Assembly: GCF_003918875.1 (NCBI RefSeq)
Contig: NW_025766059.1
Location: forward strand, 372,001 to 436,000
Direction of reading: 5' to 3'
From: Haliotis rubra
Taxonomy: Eukaryota
Length of the DNA stretch: 64,000 nt
A program made the translations under genes and the position numbers. This document shows positions 23,501 through 62,241 of the stretch, one piece after another (the first letter of the stretch is position 1; every line of letters starts with the position of its first letter). The notes beneath the pieces are model-generated. The model saw only the letters and a program-made list of their open reading frames with translations. It was not told the DNA's origin and searched no databases.

Positions 23501-26500
23501 CATCTGTCATGTACAACATGCTGCAGTATATGGATATGGTACAACATCTGTCATGTACAACATGATGTACTGGCATGCATGCAGTGACGACATCATGTCA
23601 CAACATACTGCTGTATATGGACATCTGTCATGTACAACATGATGCAGTATATGGACATACGTCTTGTACAACATCCTGCAGTATTTTGACATCTGTAAGT
23701 ACAAACACCTGTCATGTACAACATACTGCAGTATATGGACATCTGTCATGTACAACATGCTGCAGTATATGGACATCTGTCATGTACAACATGCTGCAGT
23801 ATATGACATCTGTCATGTACAACTTGCTGCAGTATCATGTACAAACATCTGTCATGTACAACATACTGCAGTATATGGACATCAGTCATGTACAACATGC
23901 TGCAGTATATGGACATCTGTCATGTACAACATGCTGCAGTATATGACATCTGTCATGTACAACATGATGCAGTATATGGACATCTGTCATGTACAACATG
24001 CATGCATGCTGCAGTATATGGACATCTGGACATGCTATCATGTACAACGTGGTACATTTGACATCTGTCATGTACAACATGCTGCAGTATATGGACATCT
24101 GTCATGTACAACATGCTGCAGTATATGACATCTGTCATGTACAACATGATGCAGTATCATGTACAAACACCTGTCATGTACAACATACTGCAGTATATGG
24201 ACATCTGTCATGTACAACATGCTGCAGTATATGGACATCTGTCATGTACAACATGCTGCAGTATATGACATCTGTCACGTACAACATGCTGCAGTATCAT
24301 GTACAAACATCTGTCATGTACAACATACTGCAGTATATGGACATCAGTCATGTACAACATGCTGCAGTATATGACATCTGTCATGTACAACATGATGCAG
24401 TATATGGACATCTGTCATGTACAACATGCTGCAGTATATGGACATCTGTCATGTACAACATGATGCAGTATCATCTGTGTACAAACACCTGTCATGTACA
24501 ACATACTGCAGTATATAGACATCTGTCATGTACAACATGCTGCAGTATATGGACATCTGTCATGTACAACATGCTGCAGTATATGACATCTGTCATGTAC
24601 AACATGATGCAGTATCATGTACAAACATCTGTCATGTACAACATACTGCAGTATATGGACATCTGTCATGTACAACATGCTGCAGTATATGGACATCTGT
24701 CATGTACAACATGCTGCAGTATATGACATCTATCATGTACAACGTGCTGTAGTATTTGACATCTGTCATGTACAACATGCTGCAGTATATGGACATCTGT
24801 CATGTACAACATGCTGCAGTATATGACATCTGTCATGTACAACATGATGCAGTATCATGTACAAACATCTGTCATGTACAACATACTGCAGTATATGGAC
24901 ATCTGTCATGTACAACATGCTGCAGTATATGGACATCTGTCATGTACAACATGCTGCAGTATATGGACATCTGTCATGTGTACAGCATGCTGCAGTATAT
25001 GGACATCTGTCACGTACAACATGCTGCAGTATCATGTACAAACATCTGTCATGTACAACATGCTGCAATATATGGACATCTGTCATGTACAACATGCTGC
25101 AGTATATGGACATCTGTCATGTACTACATGCTGCAGTATATGTATATGACATCTGTCATGTACAACGTGCTGTAGTATTTGACATCATGTACAACATGTC
25201 ATGTACAACATGCTGCAGTATATGGACATCTGTCATGTACAACATGCTGCAGTATATGGACATCTGTCATGTACAACATGCTGCAGTATATGACATCTGT
25301 CATGTACAACGTGATGCAGTGTATAGACATCTGTCATGTACAACATGCTGCAGTATATGACATCTGTCATGTACAACATGCTGCAGTATATGGACATCTG
25401 TCATGTACAACATGCTGCAGTATATGGACATCTGTCACGTACAACATGCTGCAGTATCATGTACAAACATCTGTCATGTACAACATGCTGCAGTATATGG
25501 ACATCTGTCATGTACAACATGCTGCAGTATATGGACATCTGTCATGTACAACATGCTGCAGTATATGACATCTATCATGTACAACGTGCTGTAGTATTTG
25601 ACATCTGTCATGTACAACATGCTGCAGTATATGGACATCTGTCATGTACAACATGCTGCAGTATATGGACATCTGTCATGTACAACATGCTGCAGTATAT
25701 GACATCTGTCATGTACAACGTGCTGCAGTATGTATGGACATCTGTCATGTACAACATGCTGCAGTATATGACATCTGTCATGTACAACGTGCTGCAGTAT
25801 ATGGACATCTGTCATGTACAAACATGCTGCAGTATATGGACATCTGTCATGTACAACATGATGCAGTATATGACGTATATGGACATCATGTACAACATAC
25901 TGCAGTATATGGACATCTGTCATGTACAACATGCTGCAGTATATGGACATCTGTCATGTACAACATGCTGCAGTATATGACATCTGTCATGTACAACATG
26001 CTGCAGTATATGGACATCTGTCATGTACAACATGCTGCAGTATATGGACATATGTCATGTACAACATGATGCAGTATCATGTACAAACACCTGTCATGTA
26101 CAACATACTGCAGTATATAGACATCTGTCATGTACAACATGCTGCAGTATATGGACATCTGTCATGTACAACATGCTGCAGTATATGACATCTGTCACGT
26201 ACAACATGTTGCAGTATCATGTACAAACATCTGTCATGTACAACATGATGCAGTATATGGACATCTGTCATGTACAACATGCTGCAGTATATGGACATCT
26301 GTCATGTACAACATGCTGCAGTATATGACATCTATCATGTACAACGTGCTGTAGTATTTGACATCTGTCATGTACAACATGCTGCAGTATATGGACATCT
26401 GTCATGTACAACATGCTGCAGTATATTGACATCTGTCAGTACAACATGCTGCAGTATATGGACATCTGTCATATACAACATGATGCAGTATATGGACATC

Positions 26501-29407
26501 TGTCATGTACAACATGATGCAGTATATGGACATCTGTCATGTACAACGTGCTGCAGTGTATGGACATCTGTCATGTACAACATGCTGCAGTATATGGACA
26601 TCTGTCATGTACAACGTGCTGTAGTATTTGACACCTGTCATGTACAACATGCTGCAGTATATTGACATCTGTCATGTACAACATGATGCAGTATATGGAC
26701 ATCTGTCATGTACAAACACCTGTCATGTACAACATGATGCAGTAGTGTACAAACACCTGTCATGTACAACATACTGCAGTATATGGACATCTGTCATGTA
26801 CAACATGCTGCAGTATATGGACATCTGTCATGTACAACATGCTGCAGTATATGACATCTGTCATGTACAACATGATGCAGTATCATGTACAAACATCTGT
26901 CATGTACAACATACTGCAGTATATGGACATCTGTCATGTACAACATGCTGCAGTATATGGACATCTGTCATGTACAACATGCTGCAGTATATGACATCTG
27001 TCATGTACAACATGATGCAGTATATGGACATCTGTCATGTACAACATGATGCAGTATATGGACATCTATCATGTACAACGTGCTGTAGTATTTGACATAT
27101 GTCATGTACAACATGATGCAGTATATGGACATCTGTCATGTACAACATGATGCAGTATCATGTACAAACACCTGTCATGTACAACATACTGCAGTATATG
27201 GACATCTGTCATGTACAACATGCTGCAGTATATGGACACATGTCATGTACAACATGCAGTATATGACATCTGTCATGTACAACATGATGCAGTATCATGT
27301 ACAAACATCTGTCATGTACAACATACTGCAGTATATGGACATCTGTCATGTACAACATGCTGCAGTATATGGACATCTGTCATGTACAACATGCTGCAGT
27401 ATATGACATCTGTCATGTACAACATGCTGCAGTATATGGACATCTGTCACGTACAACATGCTGCAGTATCATGTACAAACATCTGTCATGTACAACATGC
27501 TGCAATATATGGACATCTGTCATGTACAACATGCTGCAGTATATGGACATCTGTCATGTACTACATGCTGCAGTATATGACATCTGTCATGTACAACGTG
27601 CTGTAGTATTTGACATCTGTCATGTACAACATGCTGCAGTATATGGACATCTGTCATGTACAACATGCTGCAGTATATGGACATCTGTCAGTACAACATG
27701 CTGCAGTATATGGACATCTGTCATGTACAACGTGCTGCAGTGTATAGACATCTGTCATGTACAACATGCTGCAGTATATGACATCTGTCATGTACAACAT
27801 GCTGCAGTATATGGACATCTGTCATGTACAACATGATGCAGGATATGGATATCTGTCATGTACAACATGATGCAGTATATGACGTCTATCATGTACAACA
27901 TACTGCTGTATATGGACATCTGTCATGTACAACATGATGCAGTATATGGACACGTCATGTACAACATGCTGCAGTATATTGACATCTGTTAAGTACAAAC
28001 ACCTGTCATGTACAACATACTGCAGTATATGGACATCTGTCATGTACAACATGCTGCAGTATATGGACATCTGTCATGTACAACATACTGCAGTATATGG
28101 ACATCTGTCATGTACAACATGCTGCAGTATATGGACATCTGTCATGTACAACATGATGCAGTATATGACATCTGTCATGTACAACATGATGCAGTATATG
28201 GACATCTGTCATGTACAACATGCTGCAGTATATGACATCTGTCATGTACAACATGATGCAGTATATGGACATCTGTCATGTACAACATGCTGCTGTATAT
28301 GACATCTGTCATGTACAACATGATGCAGTATATGGACATCTGTCATGTAAAACGTGCTGCAGTATATGGACATCTGTCATGTACAACATGCTGCAGTATA
28401 TGAACAAGGTTATAGTTGGGATTACACCCGTCACCCGCGTGTATAAAAAGAACGTACTTGATAGCACATGAAGACCTACCTTCCATTTCCACAGCAGTGT
28501 CTGTTGTCGATGGTACCACAGCATATGTCGGGGCAGTACAAGGCCTTGTAGCCCCAACGATAACACAACTTAGAGGCATACGCTACACAACAGAGGCACA
28601 TATGATTATTGTTAGGATGCGGTGACCAGACACCTCTCACAATGAGCACAATGTTGATTCGAGGATTTCAGCTGGTATACATTTTTGTCTAACGAACTGT
28701 CGTGTTTGAAGATTTAAGTGAATCTAAAATGAACGGTTGTAGGCACGAGTCGCAGGCTCAAAGTTAAATCGTCAAAGATAGGGGGTTTATATCCATAACA
28801 AAACATGCATTAATTCCAATGTTATAATAGGTCGTGTACAGCTTAAAACAAATGACGTCACTGTATTGTAACCGCATTCCGCGAAATTAAACGACTGTAT
28901 GACGTCATCGTTGGAATAATTAAAGAAATTGATACATTCGAACGCACATTTATGTACGGATTTCTTTATCTATTATCACTGAAGGATATGTCATCCATTA
29001 AATTGTAAAAGTATTTCAAGGGGATAAATTCGTTAAACTACTCTTCTTTTAACAAGTTCTCCAAGCACAAAACAGTNNNNNNNNNNNNNNNNNNNNNNNN
29101 NNNNNNNNNNNNNNNNNNNNNNNNNNNNNNNNNNNNNNNNNNNNNNNNNNNNNNNNNNNNNNNNNNNNNNNNNNNNNNNNNNNNNNNNNNNNNNNNNNNN
29201 NNNNNNNNNNNNNNNNNNNNNNNNNTTCACAGTACAAAGGGATATAGTACTAAGAAAGGTAAGACTTTATAGATGACAACTTCTTTATTATATTATGATG
29301 AGACGTTTCGGTATAGGTACTTATACCGTTATACCATTGTCAAGTACTGTATACTTACAGACAGTGATCCAAGGTACAGCAATCCATGGACCTTTCAGCA
29401 GTAACAT
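20526..29407 (-). CDS. G3: intact STMC6/Shisa-like paralog, 171 aa, two PPxY motifs
   Basis: Exons 29407-29359 (MLLLKGPWIAVPWITV), 28582-28480 (SYASKLCYRWGYKALYCPDICCGTIDNRHCCGNG), 21639-21479 (SDGGSS...WVAAVGLITLMVLIRCCYCLRSRK...VIST), 20728-20526 (GSLPPPP...PPAYYPGMAQPPPSYAEV...CTA*). Total 516 nt, open, all GT-AG. Confidence 0.85.
20860..21330 (+). mobile_element. CR1/L2-group LINE 3' fragment (G3 intron 3)
   Basis: KFRCGMNKL...CHVC...VEDEYHVLLLCPVYSDLRSRY C-terminal motif with a short tandem (tctg) tail. Confidence 0.65.
21775..28402 (+). repeat. 34-bp satellite array (about 6.6 kb, roughly 190-195 units) in G3 intron 2
   Basis: Unit GACATCTGTCATGTACAACATGCTGCAGTATATG with 33- and 38-bp variants; accounts for all repetitive ORFs here. 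Confidence 0.97.
29077..29225. other. Assembly gap (N)
   Basis: Run of N. Confidence 1.
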
Positions 29408-38237: not shown

Positions 38238-40484
38238 AACCACAACAATAACATAATAACAGAGATTTGCTTCTACAGTTAAAGTCCTTCCAAACATATC
38301 CTCACAAATTTGATTTATGATTATTTATTTGCCTATTGAGTAGCAACAGACAAATACGATCACCATTGTTTCTTCGATCTCATAATAGTCAACACGCAAT
38401 TATCCTACTTTGATATATAAATTACTTTGGGTTTTTAAATAATTTCTTTATTTTTGTTGCATTTGTACATAGTTGCACATGTATATAAATTGTCTATATC
38501 AACAAAGGGTGACAAGATGACCAGAATTTAGTAAATTGGTGATTAATAAGATGTCCGTACATTTTTTGCTGTGTATTTCGTGAAGTAATAAAAGCATGTG
38601 AGTTCTTTCTGAATCATTTAAAAAATGTATTGGTTTTTCATGTGTTCTATTTTTTAAAATAAATTGTTTGCATACAATTATTAAAAGATTTATTGGCCCA
38701 AAATTTGGTAGCAGAGAGCAAAGAAGTATATCTTTCTTGTTAAGTTTAATGGATAAATCGGCTTCCTGGTTGACCCATTTTTCAAATTGTGTCCAGATGG
38801 AACTCAAATGGTTGCAATACCAAAACAGATGATATAAATTAACTTAAAAATATTAAAAATGCGATGTTCATAACATTTACAGTCCTACATATACTGTGCA
38901 TCCAACCCACCCCGCCCCACCACATCCCCATCGTGGGGCATTGGTCTGCCCACGGTCGGGAGAGGGCTAGTCGCGTCACACGAGCTGCTAAAGAACTGGC
39001 CTGTCAATGTAAGGTATACCTGTAGGCTAGCGCTATAGAACCAAAATATGTCTGAACTGGAACGAAAAGACAAACACACATATGTAAGACGTAATCGTGA
39101 AGGCGTCATAATCCACCGCACGGCATACGAGCAATGACTTTACGGTATGAATTATATTCTCCTTCAGGTCCTGCAACGCACGAACAAAACAGATGACATA
39201 ATACATTACTAAAATACTTCTGACCGCGATATTAATTCAAACCTGTTCTGGTTTCTTTACTTACGGAGTACATGTGTACATTCCCTCAAACGTATTTTTC
39301 TTGATTATTTGAGGCAACTTTGTCAACTCTGTGACATTTAATTTTGTAATCAACACGATGGGATTCAAAATAAAATTAGATCCTCAATTTCCTTCCGTAA
39401 GAGGAAAAGTGAATCGGATGGCAATCAGTCAATGTCTTTTGGTAGATTGTGTGTCTTCGTTAACCGAGTGAACGTTCCTCATGACATCAATCACTGGATT
39501 GTCTTGTCTAGATTCTCAGTGAAACGTTAAACAAACAAAACATGGGTGGAGAATGAAAGCGTGACCTTGTCAACTTCCTGCTATGCGTCAGATCTCATGA
39601 AAGTGGCAATGACAATACCTCAGTCGGTCAAAAACACAATAGTTTGTACAACTGAAGTATAAGTAACTGGACATGTCGGTGTCAGCTTTCTAACTTCCTT
39701 CTGTCATTGTATGTGAATGAGCGTGGTTCTACGCCAGTCTTAACGATAATTAAGGTATATCACGATGGGTGACACAAAAAATAGGCTTCACACATTGCAC
39801 TCATGTGAGAAAAACGAACCCGGATCTTCCTCGTGACGAGCTGATACTTGAATATGATGTTTGAACAAGTTTCAAATAGTTTCAGGTTTTAGCATTAGGG
39901 ACCGTTCAAAATTTAATTTGATTTTAATGGGGGTCCACCCATTCTGTTCTGGGGTGGTAGGGGAACATAAATTTTGTACACACACATGTACTAGGGGTCA
40001 GCAATTTTGTACATATAAATGTTTAAAAATTATGCTTACAAATTATGGGACGATGGGGGGTCATGACAAGCAGGATGGGTCATTTACTTTGTACATAAAT
40101 TTAGGGGTGGGATGGGGTGATGTATTCACATTGCACATTGCTTCTCCATAAAAATCAGTATCACCCTCACTAGCCACGAATTATGAACGGTCCGTTAGGA
40201 CTAGAAATATGGTCTGGGTCACGGGCAGATATGTACTGTATGTACAAGAAATATTGTTTGGTGTCAGCTTGGGGCAGTGTTGCTTACATTCAGTGAACAG
40301 CCACCTGTCTTCGAGTTTCCAGTCCAGTTACATGATCACAAATGGGGACATGAAGGTACAAGGACCAGCACACGAATCAATGTATCTAGATTCCCTACAG
40401 CATTACAGTTGTGTCTATATACTATGTATACTCACAGGCTGTGATTAATGGTAGAATAATCCACAAAGTCTTCAGCGAAATCAT
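35613..40484 (-). CDS. G4: STMC6/Shisa-like paralog, 3' end unresolved
   Basis: Exons 40484-40436 (MISLKTLWIILPLITA), 37751-37643 (SCAYEVCYKRSYGSSVRQLYCSDSCCGTSYSRYCCT), 36683-36535 (RYSYTGIYTGSGFGTVGLIAIIVTCICCCRRR...VVST) and a probable 45-bp phase-1 exon 35657-35613 (YSQRINMASAGSYA). Terminal exon not identified; an N-gap lies at 36321-36500. Confidence 0.78.
36321..36500. other. Assembly gap (N)
   Basis: Run of N. Confidence 1.
37190..37296. mobile_element. Small foldback MITE (G4 intron 2)
   Basis: 31-bp perfect inverted arms tatactcatgccaataatggttgtcaccccc, TA at both ends. Confidence 0.75.
38410..38840 (-). mobile_element. L1/Tx1 LINE 3' fragment
   Basis: HLFWYC..SSIWTQFEKWV...INLLIIVCKQFI, similar to the ORF at 33434-34021. 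Confidence 0.65.
39898..40194. mobile_element. PIF/Harbinger-like MITE (G4 intron 1)
   Basis: TIRs gggaccgttcaaaatt / aattatgaacggtccg flanked by a TTA duplication (39895-39897, 40195-40197). Confidence 0.65.
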
Positions 40485-42727: not shown

Positions 42728-42765
42728 TACTTATATAGTTATAAATAAGAGAAGCAAGTGCATCC

Positions 42766-42944
42766 TTCGGAGGTTGTGACGTAGTACGCATGTTGTGTGC
42801 ATATAGACGGAGACGACGTGCGACAATTGGACCTGCACAGACTCGATCAGACGTGCTTATTTATAACCTATCAGGAATGTTCCACGAAACCTGCGACATT
42901 GGGGATACTTCGTGGTAAGTAGCTGTGCCACGAGATAGTGCACA
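42766..42944 (+). repeat. 5' LTR of Gypsy element
   Basis: Closely matches 49388-49568; ends in CA shortly before the PBS. Confidence 0.8.
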
Positions 42945-44829
42945 CCTTTATATTGGCGCTGCGACAGTGAAACTGAACATGGGTACAATGTGTGAAGCCC
43001 ATTTCTGGTGTCCCCCGCCTTGATGTTGCTGGAATATTGCTAAAAGCGCCGTAAAACCAAACTCAGTCAGACAGTAAGTCCTTGTTGACAGATTGTCAAT
43101 TTTACCGTAACTCGGCGCTGCCGTTGGCCGATTTTGCTGGTACAACTAGTATTGTAATTCAGTGAGCCTACGCTCATTCTCCGGTATTGCGTATGAAAAC
43201 AGGCAACCCGACTTCGACAGCCACGGACCTTTGCCGGCTTTGGAAATGTCATGTTGAATTTAATTAGTGTCTGACTATTTATTGACTACTCTTGTACTCT
43301 TTGTGCTATATTTTTAATGCGAAGGTGCTTTGCACTTTCTTTGACAATTCTTGCTTGTTGGTAATTTGTAAATTTGGTCTCTGACCAAGTTGGCAAAACA
43401 AAAGTGCTCTGTAATTTTGTCATTTGAAAGTTTGTAATTTGTAATTTGGCCTCTGACTAGTTTTGAAACAATAGTGCTCTGCATTATTATTTCAGACATC
43501 TGTATCAGATAGATTATTAGTTTTAAATTGTTATCTGAATTCAAATACACTCATGTAGTCTTTCACTATATTGTCCTGAATAGTGCTCTGCATTATTCCT
43601 TCTGTCTCCTTTGACATACTAATACCAATTCCTACATATCAAGGTACCTATTGAGGTGCTCGGCACTTGGTATTTTGTACATATAGTCTCTGACTATATT
43701 TTGTTGTTGAAGTGCTACGCACTGTGACAACTAGGGAAAAGTTTCCAGTTTATTACTCTTTGGGGAGTACTTTGCACTTGAATAATTTCCATGTAACATC
43801 CTTTGGTGTTCCGCACTGTAGGATAGTGACATAGTCTCTGACTATATTTTTAAGGAGTGCTTTGCACTTCTTGGTTTCAATTGTCATTTTGTAGCGCTCA
43901 GCTGCTCTGCATTTGATCAACCCTAACACGGTCTTTCACTATATTTAATTGGTGCTTTACGCCAACTTTATCTGATTATTGTGCCTATTTGCCTCTGAAC
44001 GTTTTCCCTCCAAACTGCGAATACAATTACGGAGATGCTGGTTTTGTCAACTATGCCACTTATGAGGAACTTGTGGGGGTCGAAGAAATAGACGCCCGCT
44101 TTGCAGGTGAATTCATCCAACTTTGAATGAAGCGTGGAGATTTGAGCTACATTGACTTTAAATACAATCTTCACGGAATTCCGGAGGTAGCCCTCAACAA
44201 CTTAGATAACTCACCTTATGCCATAACTAATACAATGGTAAAACAGGAAACGCGTACGTTTGGACAGTCTCCACGTCATGTGGCCAACTGTTTTCATCTG
44301 AAGATAAAGGCAACACAATGGCAGACTTCATAGACTGCACTTTAGGTTCAGAGGGGCGTACAACTTCCACAATGGATCTAGGGACCAGTGACTGGCCTAG
44401 GGACTATTACATTGATGACAGCATCGATTATGTAGTCAAGTGGAGCGAAGTCGACATGCAATATACAGTGGCCCGCATCCCTGCTGGAGACGAGGTAGCT
44501 GACGTTTCTCTACCGTCCGTCCTCAACCAACAATGGTGGGACAGAGGCCCCAAGGAACAAACCAGTGCTTATCTTATATGCGACAGGTGCAAGGGGAAGA
44601 AACTTCAATCTCTTTGTGGGCTACACACCATTCAATGTGGAAGAGATGAGAAACTTCCTCTGCTCATCCCGTAAATCTAAGGAAACAGGGAGACAAGCAG
44701 CAATACAGGAAGTAAAGTATTTTTTACACCCAGTTCAACAGCCCATACCCATGGCCGAATAGAATCAACCATTACGGGAGGTGGTCATTAATAAAACAAG
44801 GAAAGATGCCAGCTATTGATTGCCGGTTA

Positions 44830-47800
44830 GGATAGAGTATGTGGAAGTGGCTGCAGTAGTGATTCCGGTGCGACTGCGACCATCATATCGGAAAAAAGTC
44901 TACAACACCTTACAGCCGATTCCACCATCATTGAGAAGACATTAGGAACGCTGGCAAAGACCTTAACCACGATAGGGAAGCTGGTAGGCCCAGGAGGCAT
45001 CAAAGTGGGACGGAAACAGTTTCAGGACAAGGTGTATGTGGCACCTATCAACGACAAGATATTGTTGGGCCTTGATTTCATGCGGTTACACAAGATATGT
45101 ATTGAAATGGATGGGGATTGGCTACGTCTTGATGATGAGATGTTTCCCCTAACATACTCGCCTAAGGAACCGGCAGTGTGTAGTACGCAGGTGGCTATAA
45201 AGTTCGCAACATGGTTGCCACCAAGAACGGTTGTGTTGTCTCAATCCACGATCACCAACCCTCAAATGGAAAACTTCTTGATAGAGCCTGCTCCCAACTT
45301 GAACATCATGATCCAAAGAACCTTAGATTCACAATCAGCAACAAAAGTCTGCTTAATAAATAGAAGTGATAATAGCCAAGGGATTTATCATTGGCAAGGC
45401 CACTCCTGCAACTATAAAGGAGGATGGACCCCAAAAAGGACATATTGAAGTTGCAAAGTTTGTCAGAAGGACAAATGGTGAGGTTAGGCACATTCCTGAT
45501 CACCTTCATGATTTGCTGACCAGGTCATCAGAGAACCCTCACGGAGGACCAAGCCATTCTGCAGGAGGAACTCTTGATTGAGTACAAGATGTGTTTGCAA
45601 TTTACGGCACTCGAGCACTATATTGACACAGGGGACGTTGACAACCTTGAAGCAGATTACCCCATCGACATCCGAATGGGCCGCTCAGGTCGCTCAACTG
45701 CTGTACAAGCTGACAGGCAAGAGGAAAACATTCACATGGGGCGAGGAAGAGGAGTCTGCATTCAAGGAAATGAAGGTCCCCCTTAACAACAACACTGGTT
45801 CTGGCTATTGCCAACATGGAAGATGCTTTTGTCCTTGACACGGATGCAAGCAACACAGCCATCGGAGCCGAACTCATCCAGATTCAGAATGGATCAGAAA
45901 AGGTCATACCGTATGGAAGCCTGGCACTGACTTCGGAGCAGTTGAAGTACTGCACTACCCAACATGAACTCCTAGCAATAGTGAGGTTAACAAGAATGTA
46001 TCGACATTACCTGGTCGCACTTCAGAGAGACAGTGGATGACATAGTTCCACTAGCGAAAGCTAGGTCATTGCACTCCGCTGAAGGGGATGAAGTGTCCTA
46101 TGATTTTCTTGGAGAGGGGTGGGACCTATCTTGGCTCACTGATGAAGCGGACATCAGTCCAGTGGACACAGGTGGTTCGGCAGATTCTCGACCGCCTGCA
46201 GTAAACATCAGGGGAAGCAAAGACATACCAGCTGGCCACAGGTGATACAGCTGCCACTATGCCAACCCTTGCGGACATCAGGAATGCCCAGAGAGCCGAT
46301 CCCGACCTAGACATAATCTTGGGATATGTTTTAAATGACATCAACCCTCGTGAAGGGAACTGTTTTTATGTATTCCTGCAAGCAAGGCCTTCTATGTCAA
46401 CAAGGAGTTGCACTTTCTTAAAGATGGGGTCCTATACATGAATACAGATGAAGGTGATTTACCAGTAGTGCCCAGGAAGTTGAGGGATGACTTAATCTAC
46501 CTCCACCAGGGTATCCCCTCATCTGGTCATCAAGGAAAGAACAGAACAAAGCAGAGGATGAAGCCCAAATACTTCTGGTATGGCATGTCCAGGGACATAA
46601 CTCAGGATATCGCCTCATGTCCACAATGCAATACTTGCAAGAAGCCCAACCGGATTGCAAGATGCGAAATGGCACAATGCAATGCAGGGTACCCCATTAA
46701 GAGGGTTGATTTTCTGGCTCCTCTTCCTAGAACCCCCAGGGTCAATGAGCACATCCTTGTGCTTGTTGATCAGTTTACAAACTGGGTTGAGGTGATGCTG
46801 CCCCATCGCAGTCAGCAGAGGGCACAGTCAGTGCCCTGATAGGCTGCATCTCAAGGTTGGGATTTTCCCTTTACCTCCACACAGACCAAGGTAAACATTT
46901 TGAGAGCAAGGTCTTCCAAGAAATGTGCCAGACACTCCAGATCCACAAGACGCGCACCACAACATACCATCCATCCTCGAATGGCCAGGTTGAGACAATC
47001 AACAGAATCCTTGTGGATGCGGTGCGGTGCAATATTAGCGGACAACAAGATGAGTGGGACAAGATGCAGGAGCCCTCAGAAGCTCAGTCAACATAAAGAG
47101 TGCCTTCACCCCAAATCGGCCCATGTTGGGCCGTGAAGTATGTCACCAAGCTGACATAGTCTTCCCATTTCCACAAGCGGAGACAGACTCCACTGTCGGA
47201 GACTATGTCAGACGGATGTCGGAAAGGATGAGCTCTGTTCATGCAGCTGCAAGGCAACCTTACAGGCCAGGGTCAAGACCCAGAAGCGAGGCCATGACTT
47301 ACGATTGATGAGCAACTCCTACAAAGTGGGAGACCTTGTGCTTATCCTCATCATCGCTGAAAAGCTTTGCCCTTCTTGTTTGGTTACAATCAAGAAATGC
47401 AATGGTGGTAGTAGAACACGATAAGTTACAACTATACAAGGGTCGGGACATCCCTGAGTGGCTACGCAAGTAGCTTGCACAAGGACATAGTAAAATGCCT
47501 GTAGTATGAGAGGAGATCAAGAGCTCAACGGGAGACATCTCTGAGGAAGCCCTCGAGTGGAAACCTGGCGTGGGCGATGACTCTACCACGGAAACCAGCC
47601 CTGCAGCTATGGCTTCGACAGTTGATGCGAGCTTAGACGATGAGACGTTGTACTGTGTCTGCAGACAACCCTTTGAAGGACGTTTATAATTGGGTGTGAC
47701 TGGTGCCTTGAATGGTACCATGGTGATTGCGTGGGTATCTCACCGGCCCAAGCATCAGAAATAGACAAGTACAAATGTGATCAGTGCAGGTCTCAGACCT

Positions 47801-47832
47801 CATTTGCTGATGCAGACGTGTCACAGGCATAG
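44830..47832 (+). pseudogene. pol: Gypsy pol pseudogene (PR, RT core deleted, RNase H, integrase, PHD finger)
   Basis: Motif fragments in shifting frames with many stops; no YxDD region between EHYIDTGD (about 45610) and LYKLTGKRKTFTW (about 45700). Confidence 0.85.
47648..47787 (+). other. PHD finger (C4HC3) coding segment at the end of pol
   Basis: LYCVCRQPFEGR[F]IIGCDWCLEWYHGDCVGISPAQASEIDKYKCDQC, with one 1-nt frameshift near 47683-47686. Confidence 0.88.
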
Positions 47833-48234
47833 ATGTTACAGAAGACTGTATATATACATAGGTGTATATAGGTGTTAGTTACCATGTTGATAGTTATGCC
47901 ATTGTTCCACATTTTGTATTGTTAAGCCACCATCTCAAGTTAAATATCTTTGGGCAGGAAAGATGTCGAGTGATGAAGAGAGGTATTGCCGCACGAAGAA
48001 CGAGACCTGTAGCACCCCACCATAGAAACGCCATGACTAAAAAGCGCAGTGGTGAGGAGACCAGACCAAACAGCTTTCAACAGCAGGGATAAACATAGGA
48101 ATAGCCGAAGGGGCCAAGGGGATAAGTGTTGCAGTCACCAGCACCTGGCTTCAGAAGAAAAGGCAAGGAAAAGGGACATTGCTTTCCGAAGCCACTATCA
48201 CAGGCCACTACAAGACAAGCGTATTGTTCCGCAA

Positions 48235-48430
48235 ACCAAGCTCCGCCTGTCAAGTCATATCACCGGACTCCGCCTGTCAAGTCAGGATACCGGGCTCCGC
48301 CTGTCAAGTAGGGATCACCAGGGCTCTGCCTGTCAAGTCAGGATACCAGGCTCTGCCTGTCAAGCCAGATCACCAGGCTCGGACTGTCAAGTTGGATCAC
48401 CAGGCTCTGTCCAAGTTGGATCAACCGGTC
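48235..48430 (+). repeat. About 24-27-bp tandem repeat inside the Gypsy 3' region
   Basis: caggctccgcctgtcaagtcaggatac-like units, about 7-8 copies. Confidence 0.85.
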
Positions 48431-49387
48431 ATCAAGCTCAGCTACACTAGCTGTAAGCCCATACCAGTGTTTGATTGCCGTTTTTTCCCCTCCCTGCTGG
48501 CGAAGAGGCTGCAGAGTGAAACCATGGACTTGAAGGCCCTACTGAATTTGGAACCTCACAACCCCAGTCCGCAGCTCAAAGGTGGAGTCGCAGTGACCTG
48601 GTCTCCAGAAGCTTGGCCGGTAATATCTAGCAGACTGTCCAGCGAGGATGCAGTGCTACAGGGCATTGGCTTAAACCCACGCCTGGTCAAGAGGCATGAA
48701 GATAAGATTAACACCTTCCTTCAGTTGCTGCATTGCACATCTGCCCTTGCAGATCAAGCTGCTTAGAGAGACATTCTCAAGCATACGTCCAGAGGAAAGC
48801 CTGTTCTGTTGGACATCTGGTCTTTTATGGACTGCCCTTTGTCAGTGCTGCTGAAGAAGCTGCTGGACCTGATTGGGCCTCACAGGTTGTGGCATGAGAC
48901 ATTCGTTATCGATCTCAACCTGGGCACAGCAGACGCCACATTCCTTCTGGTTAGGCTCCCTCGATCCATTTCAACGTTGGCGGATGTGTCCAACACATGA
49001 CTGGGGACTAGAGAAGGGCACTTCCCCGGAAAAGATAGTGCTGGGGTCGGCAGCACCCAGGAATGCGCCAAAAGGGGCTGCATACTCTGTTCCCAGGGAC
49101 CTATTTATGTTCACTGAAATGGCCGCGCAGACCCGACAGGTAGATTTTCGGTCATTCTCCAAGGATTGTAATACCAACGCCTCAAGAGTGTTCCGCCTCG
49201 GAGGAGAGGGAGGGAGGAGTAGAGTGGAGACTCACATATGAATCACAAATTGTTGAGTTAGTGTTACTGTTATTCGTTGGAACACTGTTACCGGTTAAAC
49301 GTGTAAATATGTTACATTGACACCGTTTCAAGTGAAATGATTATTCTGTTTGCTTCCTCACATTATCCCTTTTATGACGGGGAGGAG

Positions 49388-49568
49388 TGCGGAGGTTGTG
49401 ACGTAGTACACATGAACGACGGACGTCACATTGTGTGCATATAGACGGAGACTACTTGCGACAATTGACCTGCACAGACTCGATCAGACGTGCTTATTTA
49501 TAACCTATCAGGAATGTTCAACGGAACCTGCGACATCGGGGATACTTCGTGGTAAGTAGCTGTGCCAC
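49388..49568 (+). repeat. 3' LTR of Gypsy element (3'-truncated)
   Basis: Starts with TG immediately after the polypurine tract; matches the 5' LTR up to gctgtgccac. Confidence 0.8.
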
Positions 49569-50344
49569 CTCTATAATCCTGTATAAGCGAGTGTAGTCAG
49601 GGGCATACCGTTATAGAAAAAAGCCCGGGCTTACAAATGATTGTTGCTAAAAAGGTTGGGCAAGCCCTCAATACTATCCACATTTACAGCTTTGCAACCT
49701 ATCGGGCTTACACGAAAAAAATTGGCTTGCTACGCGCTTGGTAGTGCTTGACTATGATGATGGATCACGGATGTGACTCAAGCTGCCCCCATTATAACTC
49801 TCTATTATAATGTCGAACAGTTTCTCCCAACATCCTTCGTTGTCCGGTTTTGAGTAATATAATAACTGGATGACGTTGTTGTAAAGAAATGAGTTCTGTC
49901 ACAGTGACAGGGCGGGGTAGTATGCTGACGCTAAACACAACAACAAGCCGTGACTATATACAAGTCGACGGGAGAGATTTCTATAGGGTTGTCACAAAAC
50001 GTAGTGATTATGGTTTATCTGAATAAGGTCACACATTCAAATGTGGTGATACAAGTGTGACACATAGATGCTGTGGTATATTAATAACAGGTTTGTTTGG
50101 GATGACGCTGACTGTAACACGGGGTCATGCTGTGAACTGTGACGTCATTCACCATGTGATCACTTACTTGGATGAGCAGAATTATCTAATAGAAAGTAGA
50201 ATTTGCACAGACGTGCTTCAGGAAATGATTCTGTATTTATTCGCACGAGAGAAGAGGGGGGTCACAGCCCGTCCGTTTCTACAGCACAATCTCGTGTTAG
50301 TTACATACACGATGTTAACTTTACATTACTAAAATTGGAATTTT

Positions 50345-51210: not shown

Positions 51211-52039
51211 TGCCATCCCAAAATAGAATCGCATAGGCCAGAAATCTGTTGCGAAAATGTTCTTTTTCAAACATGTATAACTCGTCCACAAATAGACTTT
51301 AGTGCATGAATTTTTACACCAGTTTAGAAGAAGGTAATGTCTTTACAACCAAGTGGATACTTTTAGATGACGGAGACGTTAAGCGCGATGGTGACGACGT
51401 AGCACGGTCCCGACGTCGTTCCGTACAGTTTGACCGGATATCCTCCGAAGTCCAGGCACCCTGGCTGCTGTGCTCTCACCCATGGCAGCACTACAAATGT
51501 AGTACCCGGATGTACCGATCTTGGGCTGCAGTGGTGACTCGAGGTCTGCCTGTACGGGGACGGGTATTTGTTATTCCTGTTTGGTTGTAACGAGCTGCAA
51601 GCCGTGATATCGTGCTCAGACTTCAGACGCCTAGCAACAGAAGATTGGTTATCTCCAGTGTGCATTCTTTCAATGGCGATGTTCCTTGTCGAAGAGTCAA
51701 GACGTGGCGTAGTCATTTGACCTTGAAACTCCTTCAAAACGAATGCCAATTTCCGAAAGTAATCTGGATTTTTATTGCCAGACAGTGCATGCTCGTTGCT
51801 ACACAATTTCAACTGGAAGGTGATTTCTGTTGCGTTGTGGCGATGCCTATTTGATCCCTTGTAAGAAATCTCATCAAAATCAACATTTTCAGGTAAAATC
51901 GATTTTTTACTTGTGCAATTGTGTAAAATCATGTCATGAACACTTCTGTTACATATTTTGACGATTGTTTGAACACAATAGGTACTTAATAGATTATTAA
52001 AAAAACAAATCGCCTATGCGTTTCTTTTTGGGGATAGTA
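51211..52039 (-). mobile_element. Degenerate non-autonomous Tc1 element
   Basis: Degenerate TIRs (ccatcccaaaatagaatcgcatagg / cctatgcgtttctttttggggatagta); N-terminal HTH remnant PRLDSSTRNIAIERMHTGDNQSSVARR. Confidence 0.75.
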
Positions 52040-52736: not shown

Positions 52737-55282
52737 TTAAGGAATGGTCTCATAGACATGGCTGTCGCTGACGGATGCTGGGTACTCGGATGTAGGACTT
52801 GGGGTCTTCTTCATTGTCGGTGGGTCGACCTGGGGAGGTGAGGCCTTCCTGGAGTTAGGGACGTAGGCTGGTGCCGTGGGCTTTATGGAGACTATTTGTG
52901 TTGGTGGCGAGTAGGGTGGGGGAGGGTAACTTAGTCCCGCCGGTGGGGCGCCACCTGGGTGTGGCTGAGCAGGGTAACCGTACCCAGGGTTAAAGGCCGG
53001 TTTCGGAGTACCTGGATCAAATAAATTACATAGTAGATCAGAAAACAACCAATTAACCAGGCATATTAGGTTCTGAAATACTCTAATGAAACCGCCAATG
53101 AATCCGCTAGTGAATCCGTTAAAGCTATCAAGTTCTGTTCACAACTGAACTTTAACATATTTTTATTTAAGCCAGAGCCACGTTCCACTCCAAAACTCGT
53201 AAGCTTTTCGCCCAGAGACCCGTCCCACAGAGCCTTTTAAGTTCTAAGACGATCGAAAGCCTAAATATAGGCCACCGCCACCGCCACCGTCACCGTCACC
53301 GTCACCGTCAACGCACTCAGCAATATTCCAGCTGTATGATGGCGGTCTGTAAATACTCGTGTCTGGACCAGACAATCCAGTGATCAACATCCTGAGAATC
53401 GATCTACGCAGTTGGGATACGATGACATGTGTCAGCCAAGTAAGCAAGCCTGACCACCCGATCCCGTTAGTCGCCTCTTATGACAAGGTTGGGTTGCTGA
53501 AGACCAATTCTAACCTCGGTGCCAAAGAACAAAGGTTTCAGTAAGTGCTGTTTGTACCTGATGGTTTGACAGCTCGTTTGTTTGTCTTCACAGCTCGGCC
53601 TTGTTCTCTTCTCGAAGACTTCCGGCAACACACGCAGTACAGAGTGATTCCGACGATAATTCCGATGAGAGCGACGACCCCAACGGCGATGCCAGCAACC
53701 GCGGGAGTCGACAAACCAGACGTGGTAGCGCTGAAATGTGAAACGTTGATAATGCAAGGGGCCATGGGTAACTTGGTGGTTAGAGCGTTCGCTGAAGACT
53801 AGGTTCAATTTTCCTCATGGGCACACTGTGTGGAGCCAAATATTCCACCAATATTACTAAAATGGCCACAAAACACGAGTGGTCCTGTTATTTCAGGCAT
53901 TCCCCCAATATTCGCAGCCCATAGGGTCAATGAGTATTCCAGCAACATCTGAAACGGGTTTCACATTTTGTACCCATCTGTGGAATCGAATCCGGGTCTT
54001 CGGCGCGACGAGCGAACGATTTAACCACTCCACTGCCTCACCGCTCCCATATGCGTTTTAGAATCTTATGATCGTTAAGGATATAATCACTGTTGCCATG
54101 TTGTCTCGTGGTCATCGTCGACGACCGCCATCACTGAGAGACTTTCCCCCAATGAAACGACGTGGCATAAGCTAAGACTGCCAAGCGTGGCTTCAGATCA
54201 AACACACTCACTATTTTCATTTTCAAATGTATCGTGCCATAATTAGTTCAAGTTGTCAGAGTTCAAATAATTCGGATTCACTATGTAGTCATCATTCTTT
54301 AGTAACACATCAAATGTCATGACAAAATATACCATGCTTCTCAGAGTCAACGCCATTACAGTGATTGCAGGTATGTCGCTCTAATTCCATGTTTACTTTT
54401 CAACCTGGAACCTGGATAATTGTTGATTCGTCATGGTTCGAGACAACACTAACCATGTAGACGTCAGCCAGTACAGACACCTGACATGCTTGACATACAG
54501 CCAACACCTTGCCGGTGTTCAATGTAGTCATCTCATATTTTTCCATACCAGCCAATAGTTCGTTTGATTCTACACTGACTGTTTTACCGAGAATGCCAAT
54601 GTTAGAATGCATGGTCGTTTACGCCAAAGTCGCATTACACTTATTTGATGGTATGTGTTCATACCTAAATTGATAAGACCTTTTGTGTTCAGCGTCTCTG
54701 ATGGTGTAAGGGCATACCGTCATCATCGTAACCATCTGATTTGACCAGCATGGACGCCTGGTGCTGTTTGTTTTTAACTCACCTTGTAGAGCAACAATAC
54801 CGCGAGTCAATGTTCCCACAGCATCGGTCAGCACATGTCAGTTTCTTCTCTGGTCCATTGTCGGGTCTGCCCCCAGGGCTTGCACCTGACCGTTTCTGTC
54901 GCATGTAGCATTCTTCATATGCCAATGCTGAATAAGATGAACCGTGCACTTACTTAATGGTGTCAGCCATACAATTTACATAAATAACATAATCTAAACA
55001 AGAAAGACTGTAACTACAGAACACACACATAGAATGAGTTGAACCATATATTTTAGCTTGTAAGGAACATCATACTGAACAAAATTAATCAGTCTCTCTT
55101 TCTCCGCACACAAAGTAAACACTTTAAAGAAGGTTATCTATCACCTCTATAATATAATCAAAATCATGGTTATTTTTGTACACTATTTTGTATAAATCTG
55201 TCTACACAGATGGTATGTAACTATGCTACTCACACACTGTGATCAGGACAGAGAGGATGAAGGCATCATGCAAGGAGACCAT
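52737..55282 (-). CDS. G5: intact STMC6/Shisa-like paralog, 213 aa, PPPY motif and C-terminal HVYETI
   Basis: Exons 55282-55234 (MVSLHDAFILSVLITV), 54927-54783 (SLAYEECYMRQKRSG...KKLTCADRCCGNIDSRYCCST), 53730-53558 (TM AVAGIAVGVVALIGIIVGITLYCVCC), 53011-52737 (GTPKPAFNPGYGY...YPPPPYSPP...SHVYETIP*). Total 642 nt, open, GT-AG, phases 1/2/1. Confidence 0.87.
53310..53516 (-). mobile_element. Long SINE family copy (G5 intron 3)
   Basis: Reverse complement similar to 42493-42727. Confidence 0.82.
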
Positions 55283-60867: not shown

Positions 60868-62241
60868 AACTCTGTCAAAAAAAGAAACGCAACCCCTGTA
60901 TTTTAGAGATTTTGATCTGAAGTTTTAAGACGACACAGCATTGTTATTATTTAAGACAGAAGTCTGAAATTTGGCAGAATAATAACCAAGATGGGCATGT
61001 TTAAAATTGTCATTTCAAAAGTCATCTCACAGACACCAGTTTGTCACCAGGGGGGGCGTCTTTCTCAGTATCTCGTATGAGCACCACGAGCTGCAATCAC
61101 TGCACGGCATCTCCTTGGACAAGAACGGATAAGACGCCGGATTCTTTCCTGGGGAATGGCTCTCCACTCCTCCTGCAGTGCAACGCCGAGCTGTTGCAGC
61201 GTCTGTGGCGGCGGCTGACGTTGACGTACGCGTCGACCCAGAGTATCCCACAGGTGTTCAATAGGGTTGAGGTCTGGTGATTTAGAGGGCTATGGCAAGA
61301 CATTGACGTTGGAATTCTGCAGAAAGTTCATTGTTGCACGTGCAGTATGAGGCCGGGCGTTGTCTGGTTGAAAAATCTGTGTCTGTTGGTCAATAATCGG
61401 GAGAAGGTGAGGCTCCTATACACACGTTTTCTTCCGTCGTGATGTTGCAAAAGAAAACGGGATTCATCAGAAAACCAGATGCGCCTCCAGTTTTGTAAAG
61501 TCCATATCCTTACGTTGTTGCACCACCTGAGTCGTCGGCGGAGATGTAGGGGGCGTAGTACAGGTCCAACAACTGGTCTACAGGCACGTAAACCCGCTTC
61601 TTTCAGACGGTTCCTAATCGTTTGAGCTGACACTCTCCTCAAACCTGGTATTTGTGTGGCAGTCACGGTTGGTAGGGCATGCCGATTACGCAGGTGATGG
61701 ACCCGGATGTACCGATCTTGAAGGGGGGGTCGTGATTCTTGGCCTTCCACTTCTCGGGCGATCGTTGGTCAAATTGAAGTTGTTGTAGCGGCTCCAAAGT
61801 CGGGATATCGTTGTTTTGTGAACATTTAGGTGCCGTGCAACAGTTCCAAAACTTTCTCCGGCTTGAACACGACCAATGGCGATATTTCGGTCGGCAGCAC
61901 TCAATCGTGGCATTTTTCACACAGCTTTTCGGCGACAAATGAATGAATATAATACGAAAGCACATGGGCTTTTATACACCCCTACATTAACTGCCATTTT
62001 CATGATTTGCATGTGTTTTTTTTGTGCGAAGTCACCATGAGGGTCATTTCATGCGTTGTGACGGAATAAGCAATAAAATACACTTATGCGTACAAATGCA
62101 GTTGTTTGGATGGTAATCTTCATTAATTACGTGTATAATTTCAATACATTCGAATAACATTTAGTTTGGAAGCAATAACTTCATTCAAACGAATTTTTCA
62201 TATCTGAGGACAGGGGTTGCGTTTCTTTTTTTGACAGAGTT
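60868..62241 (-). mobile_element. Tc1/mariner DNA transposon, internally deleted and frameshifted
   Basis: Perfect 32-bp TIRs (60868-60899 and 62210-62241), TA on both flanks; transposase remnant 61913 to about 61027 (MPRLS...GRPR, WFSDESRF, DNARPH, SPDLNPIEHLW). Confidence 0.95.

What the first reader, a model, noticed from the sequence alone, without database searches (positions are those of the whole stretch)
47299..47832. Gypsy integrase fused in frame to an H3K4me3-reader-type PHD finger
Seen in sequence: after the integrase C-terminal motif (VVVEHDKLQLYKGRDIPEWLRK) the same frame runs through an acidic linker of about 55 aa into LYCVCRQPFEGR(F)IIGCDWCLEWYHGDCVG...KYKCDQC, a complete C4HC3 set. 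It has two premature stops (TAG and TGA, each one C>T change from CAG and CGA) and one 1-nt frameshift. Established: LYCxC...CDxCxxW[FY]HGxCVG is the BPTF/CFP1/DIDO/PHF2 class of PHD fingers, whose Tyr and Trp form an H3K4me3 cage, and chromoviruses carry a chromodomain at this same position to steer integration. Inference: a Gypsy lineage using a PHD finger to target active promoters. Its 5' LTR lies about 2.3 kb upstream of the G4 start codon, which fits but proves nothing.
Basis: partly seen in the sequence, partly recalled or inferred. Interest (0 to 1): 0.8.

Follow-up and report, generated by a model that had tools for sequence, protein, structure and literature searches.

The report
Gypsy retrotransposon integrase ending in PHD finger
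The window holds an old, broken copy of a jumping gene whose DNA-inserting enzyme ends in a small module of the kind that recognises the histone mark of active gene starts. Intact relatives of it are common in abalone, other molluscs and a sea urchin, but whether the module steers insertion is untested.

Summary
At 47,312-47,832 the integrase C-terminal motif, a roughly 57-codon acidic linker and a complete C4HC3 PHD finger lie in one reading line. That line is broken by TAG (47,471), TGA (47,507) and a one-base frame change near 47,687.

The copy is a dead Ty3/Gypsy element at 42,766-49,575. It has 187/188-bp LTRs that are 95% identical, a 4-bp target duplication (ATCC), about 240 codons of RT deleted and many stops. 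Its only sister copy carries the same three defects.

The fusion is not a one-off capture.
- In the same genome, 25 of 28 other PHD matches sit directly behind a Gypsy integrase. They fall into at least four other families.
- One of these has an uninterrupted 1,452-aa PR-RT-RNaseH-IN-PHD frame between LTRs that are 99.5% identical.
- In public data, 113 of the 120 best relatives end in the same PHD. The named ones come from six mollusc genera and a sea urchin.

The closest solved structures are H3K4me3 readers (PHF2, Cfp1/Spp1, PHF8, DIDO1, KDM7A, BPTF). The cage Tyr/Phe, Met and Trp are kept in 106, 111 and 111 of 111 proteins.

Promoter targeting remains an inference.

The parts
42762..42765 (+). 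Left target-site duplication ATCC
   Evidence: The same four bases follow the 3' LTR at 49,576-49,579.
42766..42952 (+). 5' LTR (187 bp)
   Evidence: It aligns to 49,388-49,575 with 95.3% identity over aligned bases and three indels.
42953..42969 (+). Primer-binding-site-like sequence TTGGCGCTGCGACAGTG directly after the 5' LTR
   Evidence: Read. Family C elements carry GTGGCGCTGTGACAA at the same place.
44861..45373 (+). Aspartic protease region of pol
   Evidence: tblastn with full-length Pol-PHD proteins gives 25-33% identity.
45366..45687 (+). Start of reverse transcriptase, followed by an internal deletion of about 240 codons
   Evidence: In one search the query position jumps from about 393 to about 633 at window position 45,687.
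45683..46019 (+). RNase H region
   Evidence: tblastn gives 56-67% identity.
46339..47470 (+). Integrase, read in several frames with stops: H2C2 zinc finger, catalytic core, C-terminal domain ending ...HDKLQLYKGRDIPEWLRK
   Evidence: Pfam Integrase_H2C2 E=1.6e-14 and rve E=4.3e-5 on the pieces. tblastn gives 40-56% identity.
47471..47473 (+). In-frame TAG directly after the integrase C-terminal motif
   Evidence: The same stop is present in the C2135 copy.
47474..47647 (+). Variable, acidic linker of about 57 codons, containing an in-frame TGA at 47,507-47,509
   Evidence: In relatives the linker is unconserved, with a median of about 20 aa and a range of 5-59.
47648..47787 (+). PHD finger (C4HC3), LYCVC...KYKCDQC, with a one-base frame change at about 47,687
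   Evidence: Pfam PF00628 E=4.3e-8. tblastn gives 43-56% identity to the terminal PHD of intact Pol proteins.
47830..47832 (+). Stop codon ending the Pol-PHD reading line, 14 codons after the last zinc ligand
   Evidence: Relatives end a median of 5 aa after the PHD.
47833..49378 (+). 3' internal region of unknown content, with a 27-nt tandem array at 48,213-48,422
   Evidence: It is shared with the C2135 copy. It has no Pfam match and no TatD-like remnant.
49379..49387 (+). Polypurine tract GGGGAGGAG
   Evidence: Read, directly before the 3' LTR.
49388..49575 (+). 3' LTR (188 bp)
   Evidence: Homology with the C2135 copy ends at 49,541.
49576..49579 (+). Right target-site duplication ATCC

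Best explanation
Window 42,766-49,575 is an old, non-functional insertion of a Ty3/Gypsy LTR retrotransposon. It belongs to a lineage whose Pol polyprotein has the order protease, RT, RNase H, integrase (H2C2 finger, DDE core, SH3-like C-terminal domain), short variable linker, PHD finger, stop. That part is shown.

The PHD is of the methyl-lysine-reader type of PHF2, PHF8, KDM7A, DIDO1, Cfp1/Spp1 and BPTF. Shown: sequence and predicted-fold similarity, and conserved cage residues.

Inferred: in active elements the finger holds the integrase-cDNA complex on nucleosomes that carry H3K4me3. This would bias new insertions towards the starts of active genes. Chromovirus chromodomains bias insertion towards H3K9me chromatin in the same way, and an engineered LEDGF-PHD fusion sends HIV-1 to transcription start sites.

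In the window copy itself the module is dead: two stops, one frame change, and Ile where all 111 intact relatives have the cage Met.
For: Element anatomy:
- LTRs, 4-bp target duplication, PBS and PPT.
- pol runs in the same order as intact Pol-PHD proteins.

Lineage in the same genome:
- 25 of 28 other PHD matches lie directly behind a Gypsy integrase.
- One copy has an open 1,452-aa frame with Pfam PR, RVT_1, RNase H, Integrase_H2C2, rve and PHD. Its LTRs are 99.5% identical.
- That family has at least 9 insertions with 4-bp target duplications.

Lineage elsewhere:
- 1,132 hits, and 113 of the top 120 have a complete terminal PHD.
- Named sources are Haliotis, Ostrea, Pinctada, Batillaria, Nucella, Gigantopelta and Lytechinus.

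Selection on the finger:
- The PHD columns are conserved about as well as the integrase zinc finger, while the linker is not.
- Cage Tyr/Phe in 106/111, Met in 111/111, Trp in 111/111.

Class of the finger:
- Best PDB sequence matches are PHF2 at 1.4e-16, Cfp1, Spp1, PHF8, DIDO1, KDM7A and BPTF.
- The AF2 model (core pLDDT above 90) superposes on H3K4me3-bound DIDO, BPTF and PHF2 fingers at about 1 A over about 52 residues.

Predicted complex of the PHD with abalone H3 residues 2-41:
- Score 0.35 against a best control of 0.01, contact agreement at least 94%, partner pLDDT at least 53.
- The tool's verdict is 'weak support'. The mark was reached by 51 of 78 solved complexes and 2 of 108 mismatches, and passes at 0.60 or under are more often wrong than right unless the guess was likely beforehand.

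Precedents:
- A PHD put in place of the LEDGF chromatin-binding part moved HIV-1 integration to within 2.5 kb of TSSs in 50.3% of events, against 3.8% (PMC4176367).
- Chromodomain targeting by chromoviruses, Gao 2008 as cited in PMC6673714.
Against: - There is no binding measurement and no insertion-site data. The predicted complex is only weak support, and solved PHD-H3 complexes may be remembered by the model.
- In six annotated or gene-called neighbourhoods of relatives in other species, no evident host gene start lies beside the element. The neighbours are element ORFs, other transposon genes or unnamed short calls.
- One young abalone copy sits in an arm of an inverted repeat.
- Flanks of about 30 LTR ends of one young family do not differ from background in GC or CpG o/e. 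This is a poor proxy.
- Retained insertions are filtered by selection, so none of this refutes targeting.
- The position aligned with BPTF Tyr17 is Asp in 58 of 111 proteins. Many members therefore have a two-aromatic half-cage plus Met, as in Cfp1-like fingers, whose preference among K4 methyl states cannot be read from sequence.
- Bias towards promoters could be harmful. Grau-Bove et al. argue this to explain why bromodomain-transposon fusions are rare.
Confidence: 0.6

Rival explanations
1. The finger reads chromatin for a purpose other than choosing insertion sites. It might hold the pre-integration complex on chromosomes in general, or act after integration to keep the element's own chromatin active.
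For: The evidence for a histone-reader finger is the same. It sits at the very end of Pol and is not tied to a known DNA-contacting part. Retained copies show no obvious link to gene starts. Craig et al. discuss TE PHD fingers as possibly involved in chromatin remodelling.
Against: The finger is covalently joined to integrase at the place where chromoviruses carry their targeting chromodomain. Integrase is not known to stay at the locus after integration. This second point rests on general knowledge and was not tested here.
Confidence: 0.2
2. The finger binds something other than methylated H3K4: unmodified H3, another histone mark, or a non-histone peptide with an H3-like N-terminus.
For: The PHF2 finger, the best sequence match, has also been solved with a VRK1 N-terminal peptide (7m10). 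The BPTF-Tyr17 position varies: D, W, Y or C. Some related plant fingers in the hit list bind H3K27me3 (5z8l, 5znr).
Against: The invariant Trp and Met and the near-invariant Tyr/Phe are the marks of the methyl-lysine cage. From general knowledge, readers of unmodified K4 lack the Trp. Nearly all top structural matches are H3K4me3 or H3K4me2 complexes.
Confidence: 0.12
3. The window's PHD is a one-off capture of a host exon (for example from the BPTF-like gene), or a chance cysteine pattern, and has nothing to do with the element's biology.
For: The window's family has only two copies in this genome, both broken in the same way. The best non-transposon match is a host BPTF-like tandem PHD at 58% identity.
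Against: The element matches Pol-PHD proteins of many species in the same order, and the PHD ends the protein at the same place. At least four other families in the genome and 113 of 120 public relatives share the arrangement. The finger lies inside LTRs bounded by a target duplication.
Confidence: 0.02

Closest known systems
Chromoviruses (Ty3/Gypsy elements with a chromodomain at the integrase C-terminus, e.g. MAGGY, Tf1; Gao et al. 2008 as cited in PMC6673714)
   Same: A small histone-reader module is fused after the integrase C-terminal domain through a short linker, at the very end of Pol. The proposed role is to tether integration to marked nucleosomes.
   Different: The module here is a zinc-binding PHD finger of the H3K4me3-reader type, not a chromodomain. 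No Pfam Chromo match was found. The expected target is therefore active gene starts rather than H3K9me heterochromatin. Whether the lineage branches within or outside the chromoviruses was not tested.
PHD fingers in other transposable elements: CR1-like LINE ORF1 (Kapitonov and Jurka 2003), Chlamydomonas REM1 and Gypsy-7a_cRei (Perez-Alegre 2005; Craig et al.), Ginger1-9_HM transposase (PMC2836005), cnidarian retrotransposons with PYGO-like PHD (Grau-Bove et al.)
   Same: A transposable-element protein carries a PHD finger. Published surveys already state that PHD and chromo domains often occur together with RT and integrase domains.
   Different: In Gypsy-7a_cRei the finger is drawn between RNase H and integrase. 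In CR1 it is in ORF1. In Ginger1 it accompanies a Ulp1 protease. The cnidarian fingers are PYGO-like. Here the finger is PHF2/Cfp1/BPTF-like, terminal, and found in molluscs and a sea urchin. Two mollusc transposon surveys do not mention it.
Host H3K4me3-reader PHD fingers: PHF2, PHF8, KDM7A, DIDO1, Cfp1/Spp1, BPTF
   Same: They are 47-59% identical over about 52 residues and superpose at about 1 A on the model. They have the same zinc ligands, the cage Tyr and Trp, and Met at the BPTF-Tyr23 position as in PHF2, PHF8, DIDO and Cfp1.
   Different: The finger is attached to a retrotransposon integrase rather than to a demethylase, remodeller or methyltransferase subunit. The BPTF-Tyr17 position is often Asp. 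Which host gene donated it cannot be resolved from about 50 residues.
Engineered LEDGF/p75-PHD fusions that retarget HIV-1 integration (reviewed in PMC4176367)
   Same: A PHD finger linked to the integration machinery is enough to move integration to TSSs: 50.3% against 3.8% within 2.5 kb.
   Different: That system is artificial, and the finger is on a host cofactor rather than on integrase. Here the fusion is natural and direct, and its effect has not been measured.

Membership tests
Ty3/Gypsy LTR retrotransposon | Two LTRs in direct orientation, flanked by a short target-site duplication | tested here: met
   LTRs of 187 and 188 bp, 95.3% identical, with ATCC on both sides.
Ty3/Gypsy LTR retrotransposon | Pol domain order PR-RT-RNase H-IN, with integrase last | tested here: met
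   tblastn hits run in that order. Pfam finds Integrase_H2C2 and rve. About 240 codons of RT are missing in this copy.
Ty3/Gypsy LTR retrotransposon | Primer binding site after the 5' LTR and polypurine tract before the 3' LTR | tested here: met
   TTGGCGCTGCGACAG follows the 5' LTR and GGGGAGGAG precedes the 3' LTR. A related family has the same PBS type. The matching tRNA was not identified.
PHD finger (Pfam PF00628) | Profile match above the curated cut-off, with all eight C4HC3 zinc ligands | tested here: met
   33.5 bits against a cut-off of 24, E=4.3e-8, with X at the frame break. The ligands were read. An intact relative scores 40.9 bits.
H3K4me3-reader class of PHD fingers (BPTF/PHF2/PHF8/DIDO/Cfp1) | Cage residues: aromatic residue before the first Cys, and Trp two residues before the zinc-binding His | tested here: met
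   The window has Tyr and Trp. In the lineage, Tyr/Phe is present in 106/111 and Trp in 111/111. The positions were mapped through the BPTF alignment.
H3K4me3-reader class of PHD fingers (BPTF/PHF2/PHF8/DIDO/Cfp1) | Third cage position (BPTF Tyr23; Met in PHF2, PHF8, DIDO and Cfp1) | tested here: not met
   The window copy has Ile there, in FIIGC. All 111 intact relatives have Met. The feature is met for the lineage but not for this dead copy.
H3K4me3-reader class of PHD fingers (BPTF/PHF2/PHF8/DIDO/Cfp1) | The closest solved structures are H3K4me3-bound fingers | tested here: met
   phmmer against the PDB and Foldseek with the AF2 model, both using the intact family C finger.
H3K4me3-reader class of PHD fingers (BPTF/PHF2/PHF8/DIDO/Cfp1) | Measured, methylation-dependent binding to the H3 tail | not testable with these tools
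   Only a predicted complex with unmodified H3 residues 2-41 could be made: score 0.35 against a best control of 0.01, verdict 'weak support'.
Chromovirus | Chromodomain at the integrase C-terminus | tested here: not met
   Pfam finds PHD and no Chromo domain in the intact relatives. Nothing after the window's PHD matches Pfam.
Chromovirus | Placement inside the chromovirus clade in an RT/IN phylogeny | not tested
   No reference set (GyDB or Repbase) was at hand.
Promoter-targeting retroelement (as Tf1, MLV) | New insertions enriched near transcription start sites | not testable with these tools
   There is no gene annotation or chromatin data for this genome. Proxies were uninformative.

The most novel reading that the evidence does not exclude
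A widespread marine-invertebrate Gypsy lineage (molluscs and echinoderms) uses an integrase-fused H3K4me3-reading PHD finger to insert next to active promoters. It would be the natural counterpart of engineered LEDGF-PHD retargeting and the euchromatic mirror image of chromoviruses. Most of its families also carry a third gene for a TatD-like nuclease, which no held paper describes in an LTR element.
Probability: 0.35. Interest if true: 0.75.

Novelty: new variant of a known kind. Interest (0 to 1): 0.55.

Why it matters
Chromatin-reader modules on integrases are one of the few ways a retroelement can choose where it lands. So far only the chromodomain, which reads heterochromatin, has been shown to work this way in nature.

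A natural integrase-PHD fusion of the H3K4me3-reader type would give the opposite preference. It could be tested directly, because the abalone genome holds young copies with intact frames and clear target duplications.

It also bears on two other questions: how transposons shape regulatory regions in molluscs, and how compact natural tethering modules could inform integration targeting.

The general idea that transposons capture PHD fingers is already published, so the gain is a defined, abundant and testable lineage rather than a new principle.

Tried and rejected
- **Other copies of the window's family.** A DNA search of the genome found only one other copy, 5'-truncated and with the same three defects. 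An intact IN-PHD frame cannot be shown within this family.
- **The 'G4' gene.** ORFs within about 3 kb of either LTR are transposon remnants or have no match: a LINE RT tail at 38,499-38,807(-), a Tc1-like remnant at 51,363-51,932(-) judged by eye, and no Pfam or Atlas hit. The remark could not be evaluated.
- **Insertion preference.** GC and CpG o/e of 1-kb flanks of 30 family C LTR ends were 0.81, against 0.74 for window background, with medians of 0.80 and 0.82. There is no difference, and the proxy is weak. Six neighbourhoods of relatives in other species showed no evident host gene start next to the element, but the sample is tiny and filtered by selection.
- **Expression.** No run on record as RNA holds the family C IN-PHD stretch. 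A 2,714-nt contig from a run only guessed to be RNA covers 6,903-8,342 of L033 without gaps at about 94% identity. This is no proof of transcription.
- **Predicted PHD-H3 complex.** Weak support only: 0.35 against a best control of 0.01. I do not count it as evidence of binding.
- **Representative-library search with IN C-terminal domain plus PHD.** It gave 6,093 hits at E<=1e-3, but host multi-PHD proteins are mixed in. Only about 25 of the 147 new representatives clearly show the integrase motif plus a terminal PHD, so it gives no clean size for the lineage.
- **TatD-like remnant in the window's 3' region.** None found.
- **One-off exon capture or chance pattern.** Rejected (see rivals).
- **Literature.** Seven full-text searches found no description of this lineage. 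Repbase and GyDB could not be searched, so a prior database entry cannot be excluded.
Full report
**1. What is in the window**

- The integrase C-terminal motif ...VVVEHDKLQLYKGRDIPEWLRK ends at 47,470.
- TAG follows at 47,471 and TGA at 47,507.
- The same frame continues through an Asp/Glu-rich stretch to ...LYCVCRQPFEGR at 47,686.
- After a one-base frame change, the next frame gives FIIGCDWCLEWYHGDCVG...KYKCDQC and stops at 47,830.

With X at the break, the piece matches Pfam PHD at E=4.3e-8, above the curated cut-off. The upstream pieces match Integrase_H2C2 and rve.

**2. The element around it**

- Direct repeats at 42,766-42,952 and 49,388-49,575 are 95.3% identical and are flanked by ATCC on both sides.
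- A PBS-like TTGGCGCTGCGACAG follows the left repeat, and GGGGAGGAG precedes the right one.
- Full-length Pol proteins of relatives align in order:
  - protease at 44,861-45,373;
  - the start of RT up to 45,687;
  - a jump of about 240 residues;
  - RNase H at 45,683-46,019;
  - integrase at 46,339-47,470;
  - the PHD at 47,630-47,802.

The PHD therefore lies inside a true LTR element and ends its pol. The copy is old and thoroughly broken.

**3. The sister copy**

The only other DNA copy in the 1.38-Gb genome, on contig C2135, is homologous from 47,203 to 49,541. It has different flanks and 91% identity, and it carries the same two stops and the same frame change. These defects therefore predate the split of the two copies. 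The window's own family offers no intact frame.

**4. Is the fusion real at lineage level?**

Yes. I searched the genome in six frames with the second half of the finger, which gave 42 matches. Of the 28 non-self matches that were fetched:
- 25 have a Gypsy integrase directly upstream and in the same order;
- the three exceptions are a host BPTF-like tandem PHD, which was hit twice, and a Cfp1-like exon.

At least four further families are represented.
- One copy (L033:4011-8366) is an uninterrupted 1,452-aa frame. Pfam finds protease, RVT_1, RNase H, Integrase_H2C2, rve and PHD, and no chromodomain.
- Its 221-bp LTRs differ at one position.
- That family has at least nine full-length insertions with 4-bp target duplications, TG...CA LTR ends and the same PBS type as the window element.

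**5. Beyond this genome**

The word-indexed protein search with the integrase-PHD part of that frame found 1,132 proteins.
- Of the best 120 (46-59% identical), 113 carry a complete C4HC3 motif within 0-26 residues of the Pol C-terminus.
- The named ones come from Haliotis rufescens, Ostrea edulis, Pinctada imbricata, Batillaria, Nucella, Gigantopelta and the sea urchin Lytechinus pictus.
- In an alignment of 111 of them, the PHD is conserved about as well as the integrase zinc finger, while the linker is not conserved at all.
- The linker has a median length of about 20 residues.

**6. What kind of PHD**

- The best matches among solved structures are PHF2 (1.4e-16), Cfp1, Spp1, PHF8, DIDO1, KDM7A and BPTF.
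- An AF2 model of the intact finger (mean pLDDT 78, core above 90) superposes at about 1 A on H3K4me3-bound DIDO, BPTF and PHF2 fingers.
- I mapped the BPTF cage through the alignment. That Tyr10, Tyr17, Tyr23 and Trp32 form the cage is my recollection. The entry title of 2ri7 names only a Tyr17 mutant and gives no residue roles. The 111 proteins show:

| BPTF cage position | Residues in the 111 proteins | Window copy |
|---|---|---|
| Tyr10 | Tyr/Phe in 106 | Tyr |
| Tyr17 | Asp 58, Trp 20, Tyr 15, Cys 8 | Phe |
| Tyr23 | Met in 111 | Ile |
| Trp32 | Trp in 111 | Trp |

- A predicted complex with abalone H3 residues 2-41 scored 0.35 against a best control of 0.01. The tool rates this as weak support: the mark was reached by 51 of 78 solved complexes and 2 of 108 mismatches, and passes at 0.60 or under are more often wrong than right unless the guess was likely beforehand. 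Contact agreement was at least 94% and partner pLDDT at least 53. Solved PHD-H3 complexes may be remembered by the model.

**7. Mechanism**

Inferred: the finger tethers the intasome to H3K4me3 nucleosomes. Two precedents make this plausible.
- Chromodomains sit at the same position in chromoviruses.
- A PHD finger put in place of the chromatin-binding part of LEDGF moved HIV-1 integration to TSSs, with 50.3% against 3.8% of events within 2.5 kb (PMC4176367).

I could not test insertion preference. There is no annotation for this genome, a composition proxy showed nothing, and six neighbourhoods in other species showed no evident host gene start beside the element.

**8. Prior knowledge**

- PHD fingers in transposons are published: CR1 ORF1, Chlamydomonas REM1 and Gypsy-7a_cRei, and Ginger1-9.
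- Grau-Bove et al. report that PHD and chromo domains often occur together with RT and integrase domains, with PYGO-like examples in cnidarians.
- Two mollusc transposon surveys do not mention PHD, and no held paper describes this lineage.
- Repbase and GyDB could not be searched.

I therefore rate it a new variant of a known kind.

**9. Earlier notes of this scan**

One note (s1-347334) names the genome as blacklip abalone, which I did not check. Another first-reader note (s1-333081) flags an integrase-PHD fusion elsewhere in this genome. This agrees with the many loci found.

**10. Limits kept**

I read breaks through only with X or as separate pieces. I make no statement on how the breaks arose.

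Noticed in passing
L040:14206-16356; L047:12667-13959; L048:14506-16251; L050:14763-17351; L051:13690-15921; L034:6788-8888; C2270:175695-177217: In most families of this lineage the Pol-PHD gene is followed within 24-63 bp, on the same strand and inside the LTRs, by a third ORF of 430-862 aa. Its C-terminal half matches Pfam TatD_DNase (E=1.4e-32). It is present in Haliotis rufescens, Lytechinus pictus, Pinctada, two ENA contigs and families B, C and E of this genome. In Ostrea edulis only its N-terminal, non-TatD part is found. It is absent from the window copy and from family A. No held paper mentions TatD in an LTR retrotransposon.
   Followed up: partly
P0006, P0020, P0064: Gypsy Pol-PHD proteins are deposited as proteins of bacterial MAGs (Sedimenticola sp.; Candidatus Thiodiazotropha from lucinid clams). 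They are almost certainly host-animal contigs binned by mistake into symbiont genomes.
   Followed up: no
P0074: One metagenomic Pol-PHD protein also carries Pfam PF01885 (Tpt1/KptA RNA 2'-phosphotransferase), a further accessory domain in this lineage.
   Followed up: no
window 48213-48422; L033:1029-1539: The window element has a 27-nt tandem array in its 3' internal region, also present in the C2135 copy. The family C element has a roughly 41-nt tandem array between its 5' LTR and gag.
   Followed up: no
G000:C2270:166144-166455 and 177896-178859: The young family C element sits inside one arm of an inverted repeat with arms of about 565 bp that are 98% complementary. This looks like a foldback or MITE-like structure.
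   Followed up: no
window 52737-53048 and 53538-53765, minus strand: This may be a host gene. One ATG-started exon encodes a single-pass membrane segment, and a second exon is rich in Pro with PPxY-like motifs. It lies about 3-4 kb beyond the 3' LTR and points away from the element.
   Followed up: no
window 61331-61750 (-) and 51363-51932 (-): These are Tc1/mariner-type transposase remnants. The first matches HTH_Tnp_Tc3_2 at E=6.5e-11. The second has a similar helix-turn-helix by eye only.
   Followed up: partly
window 22886-27836 (+): A 5-kb run of overlapping plus-strand ORFs of 131-245 aa has no convincing Pfam match among the four tested. It may be another degraded mobile element.
   Followed up: partly
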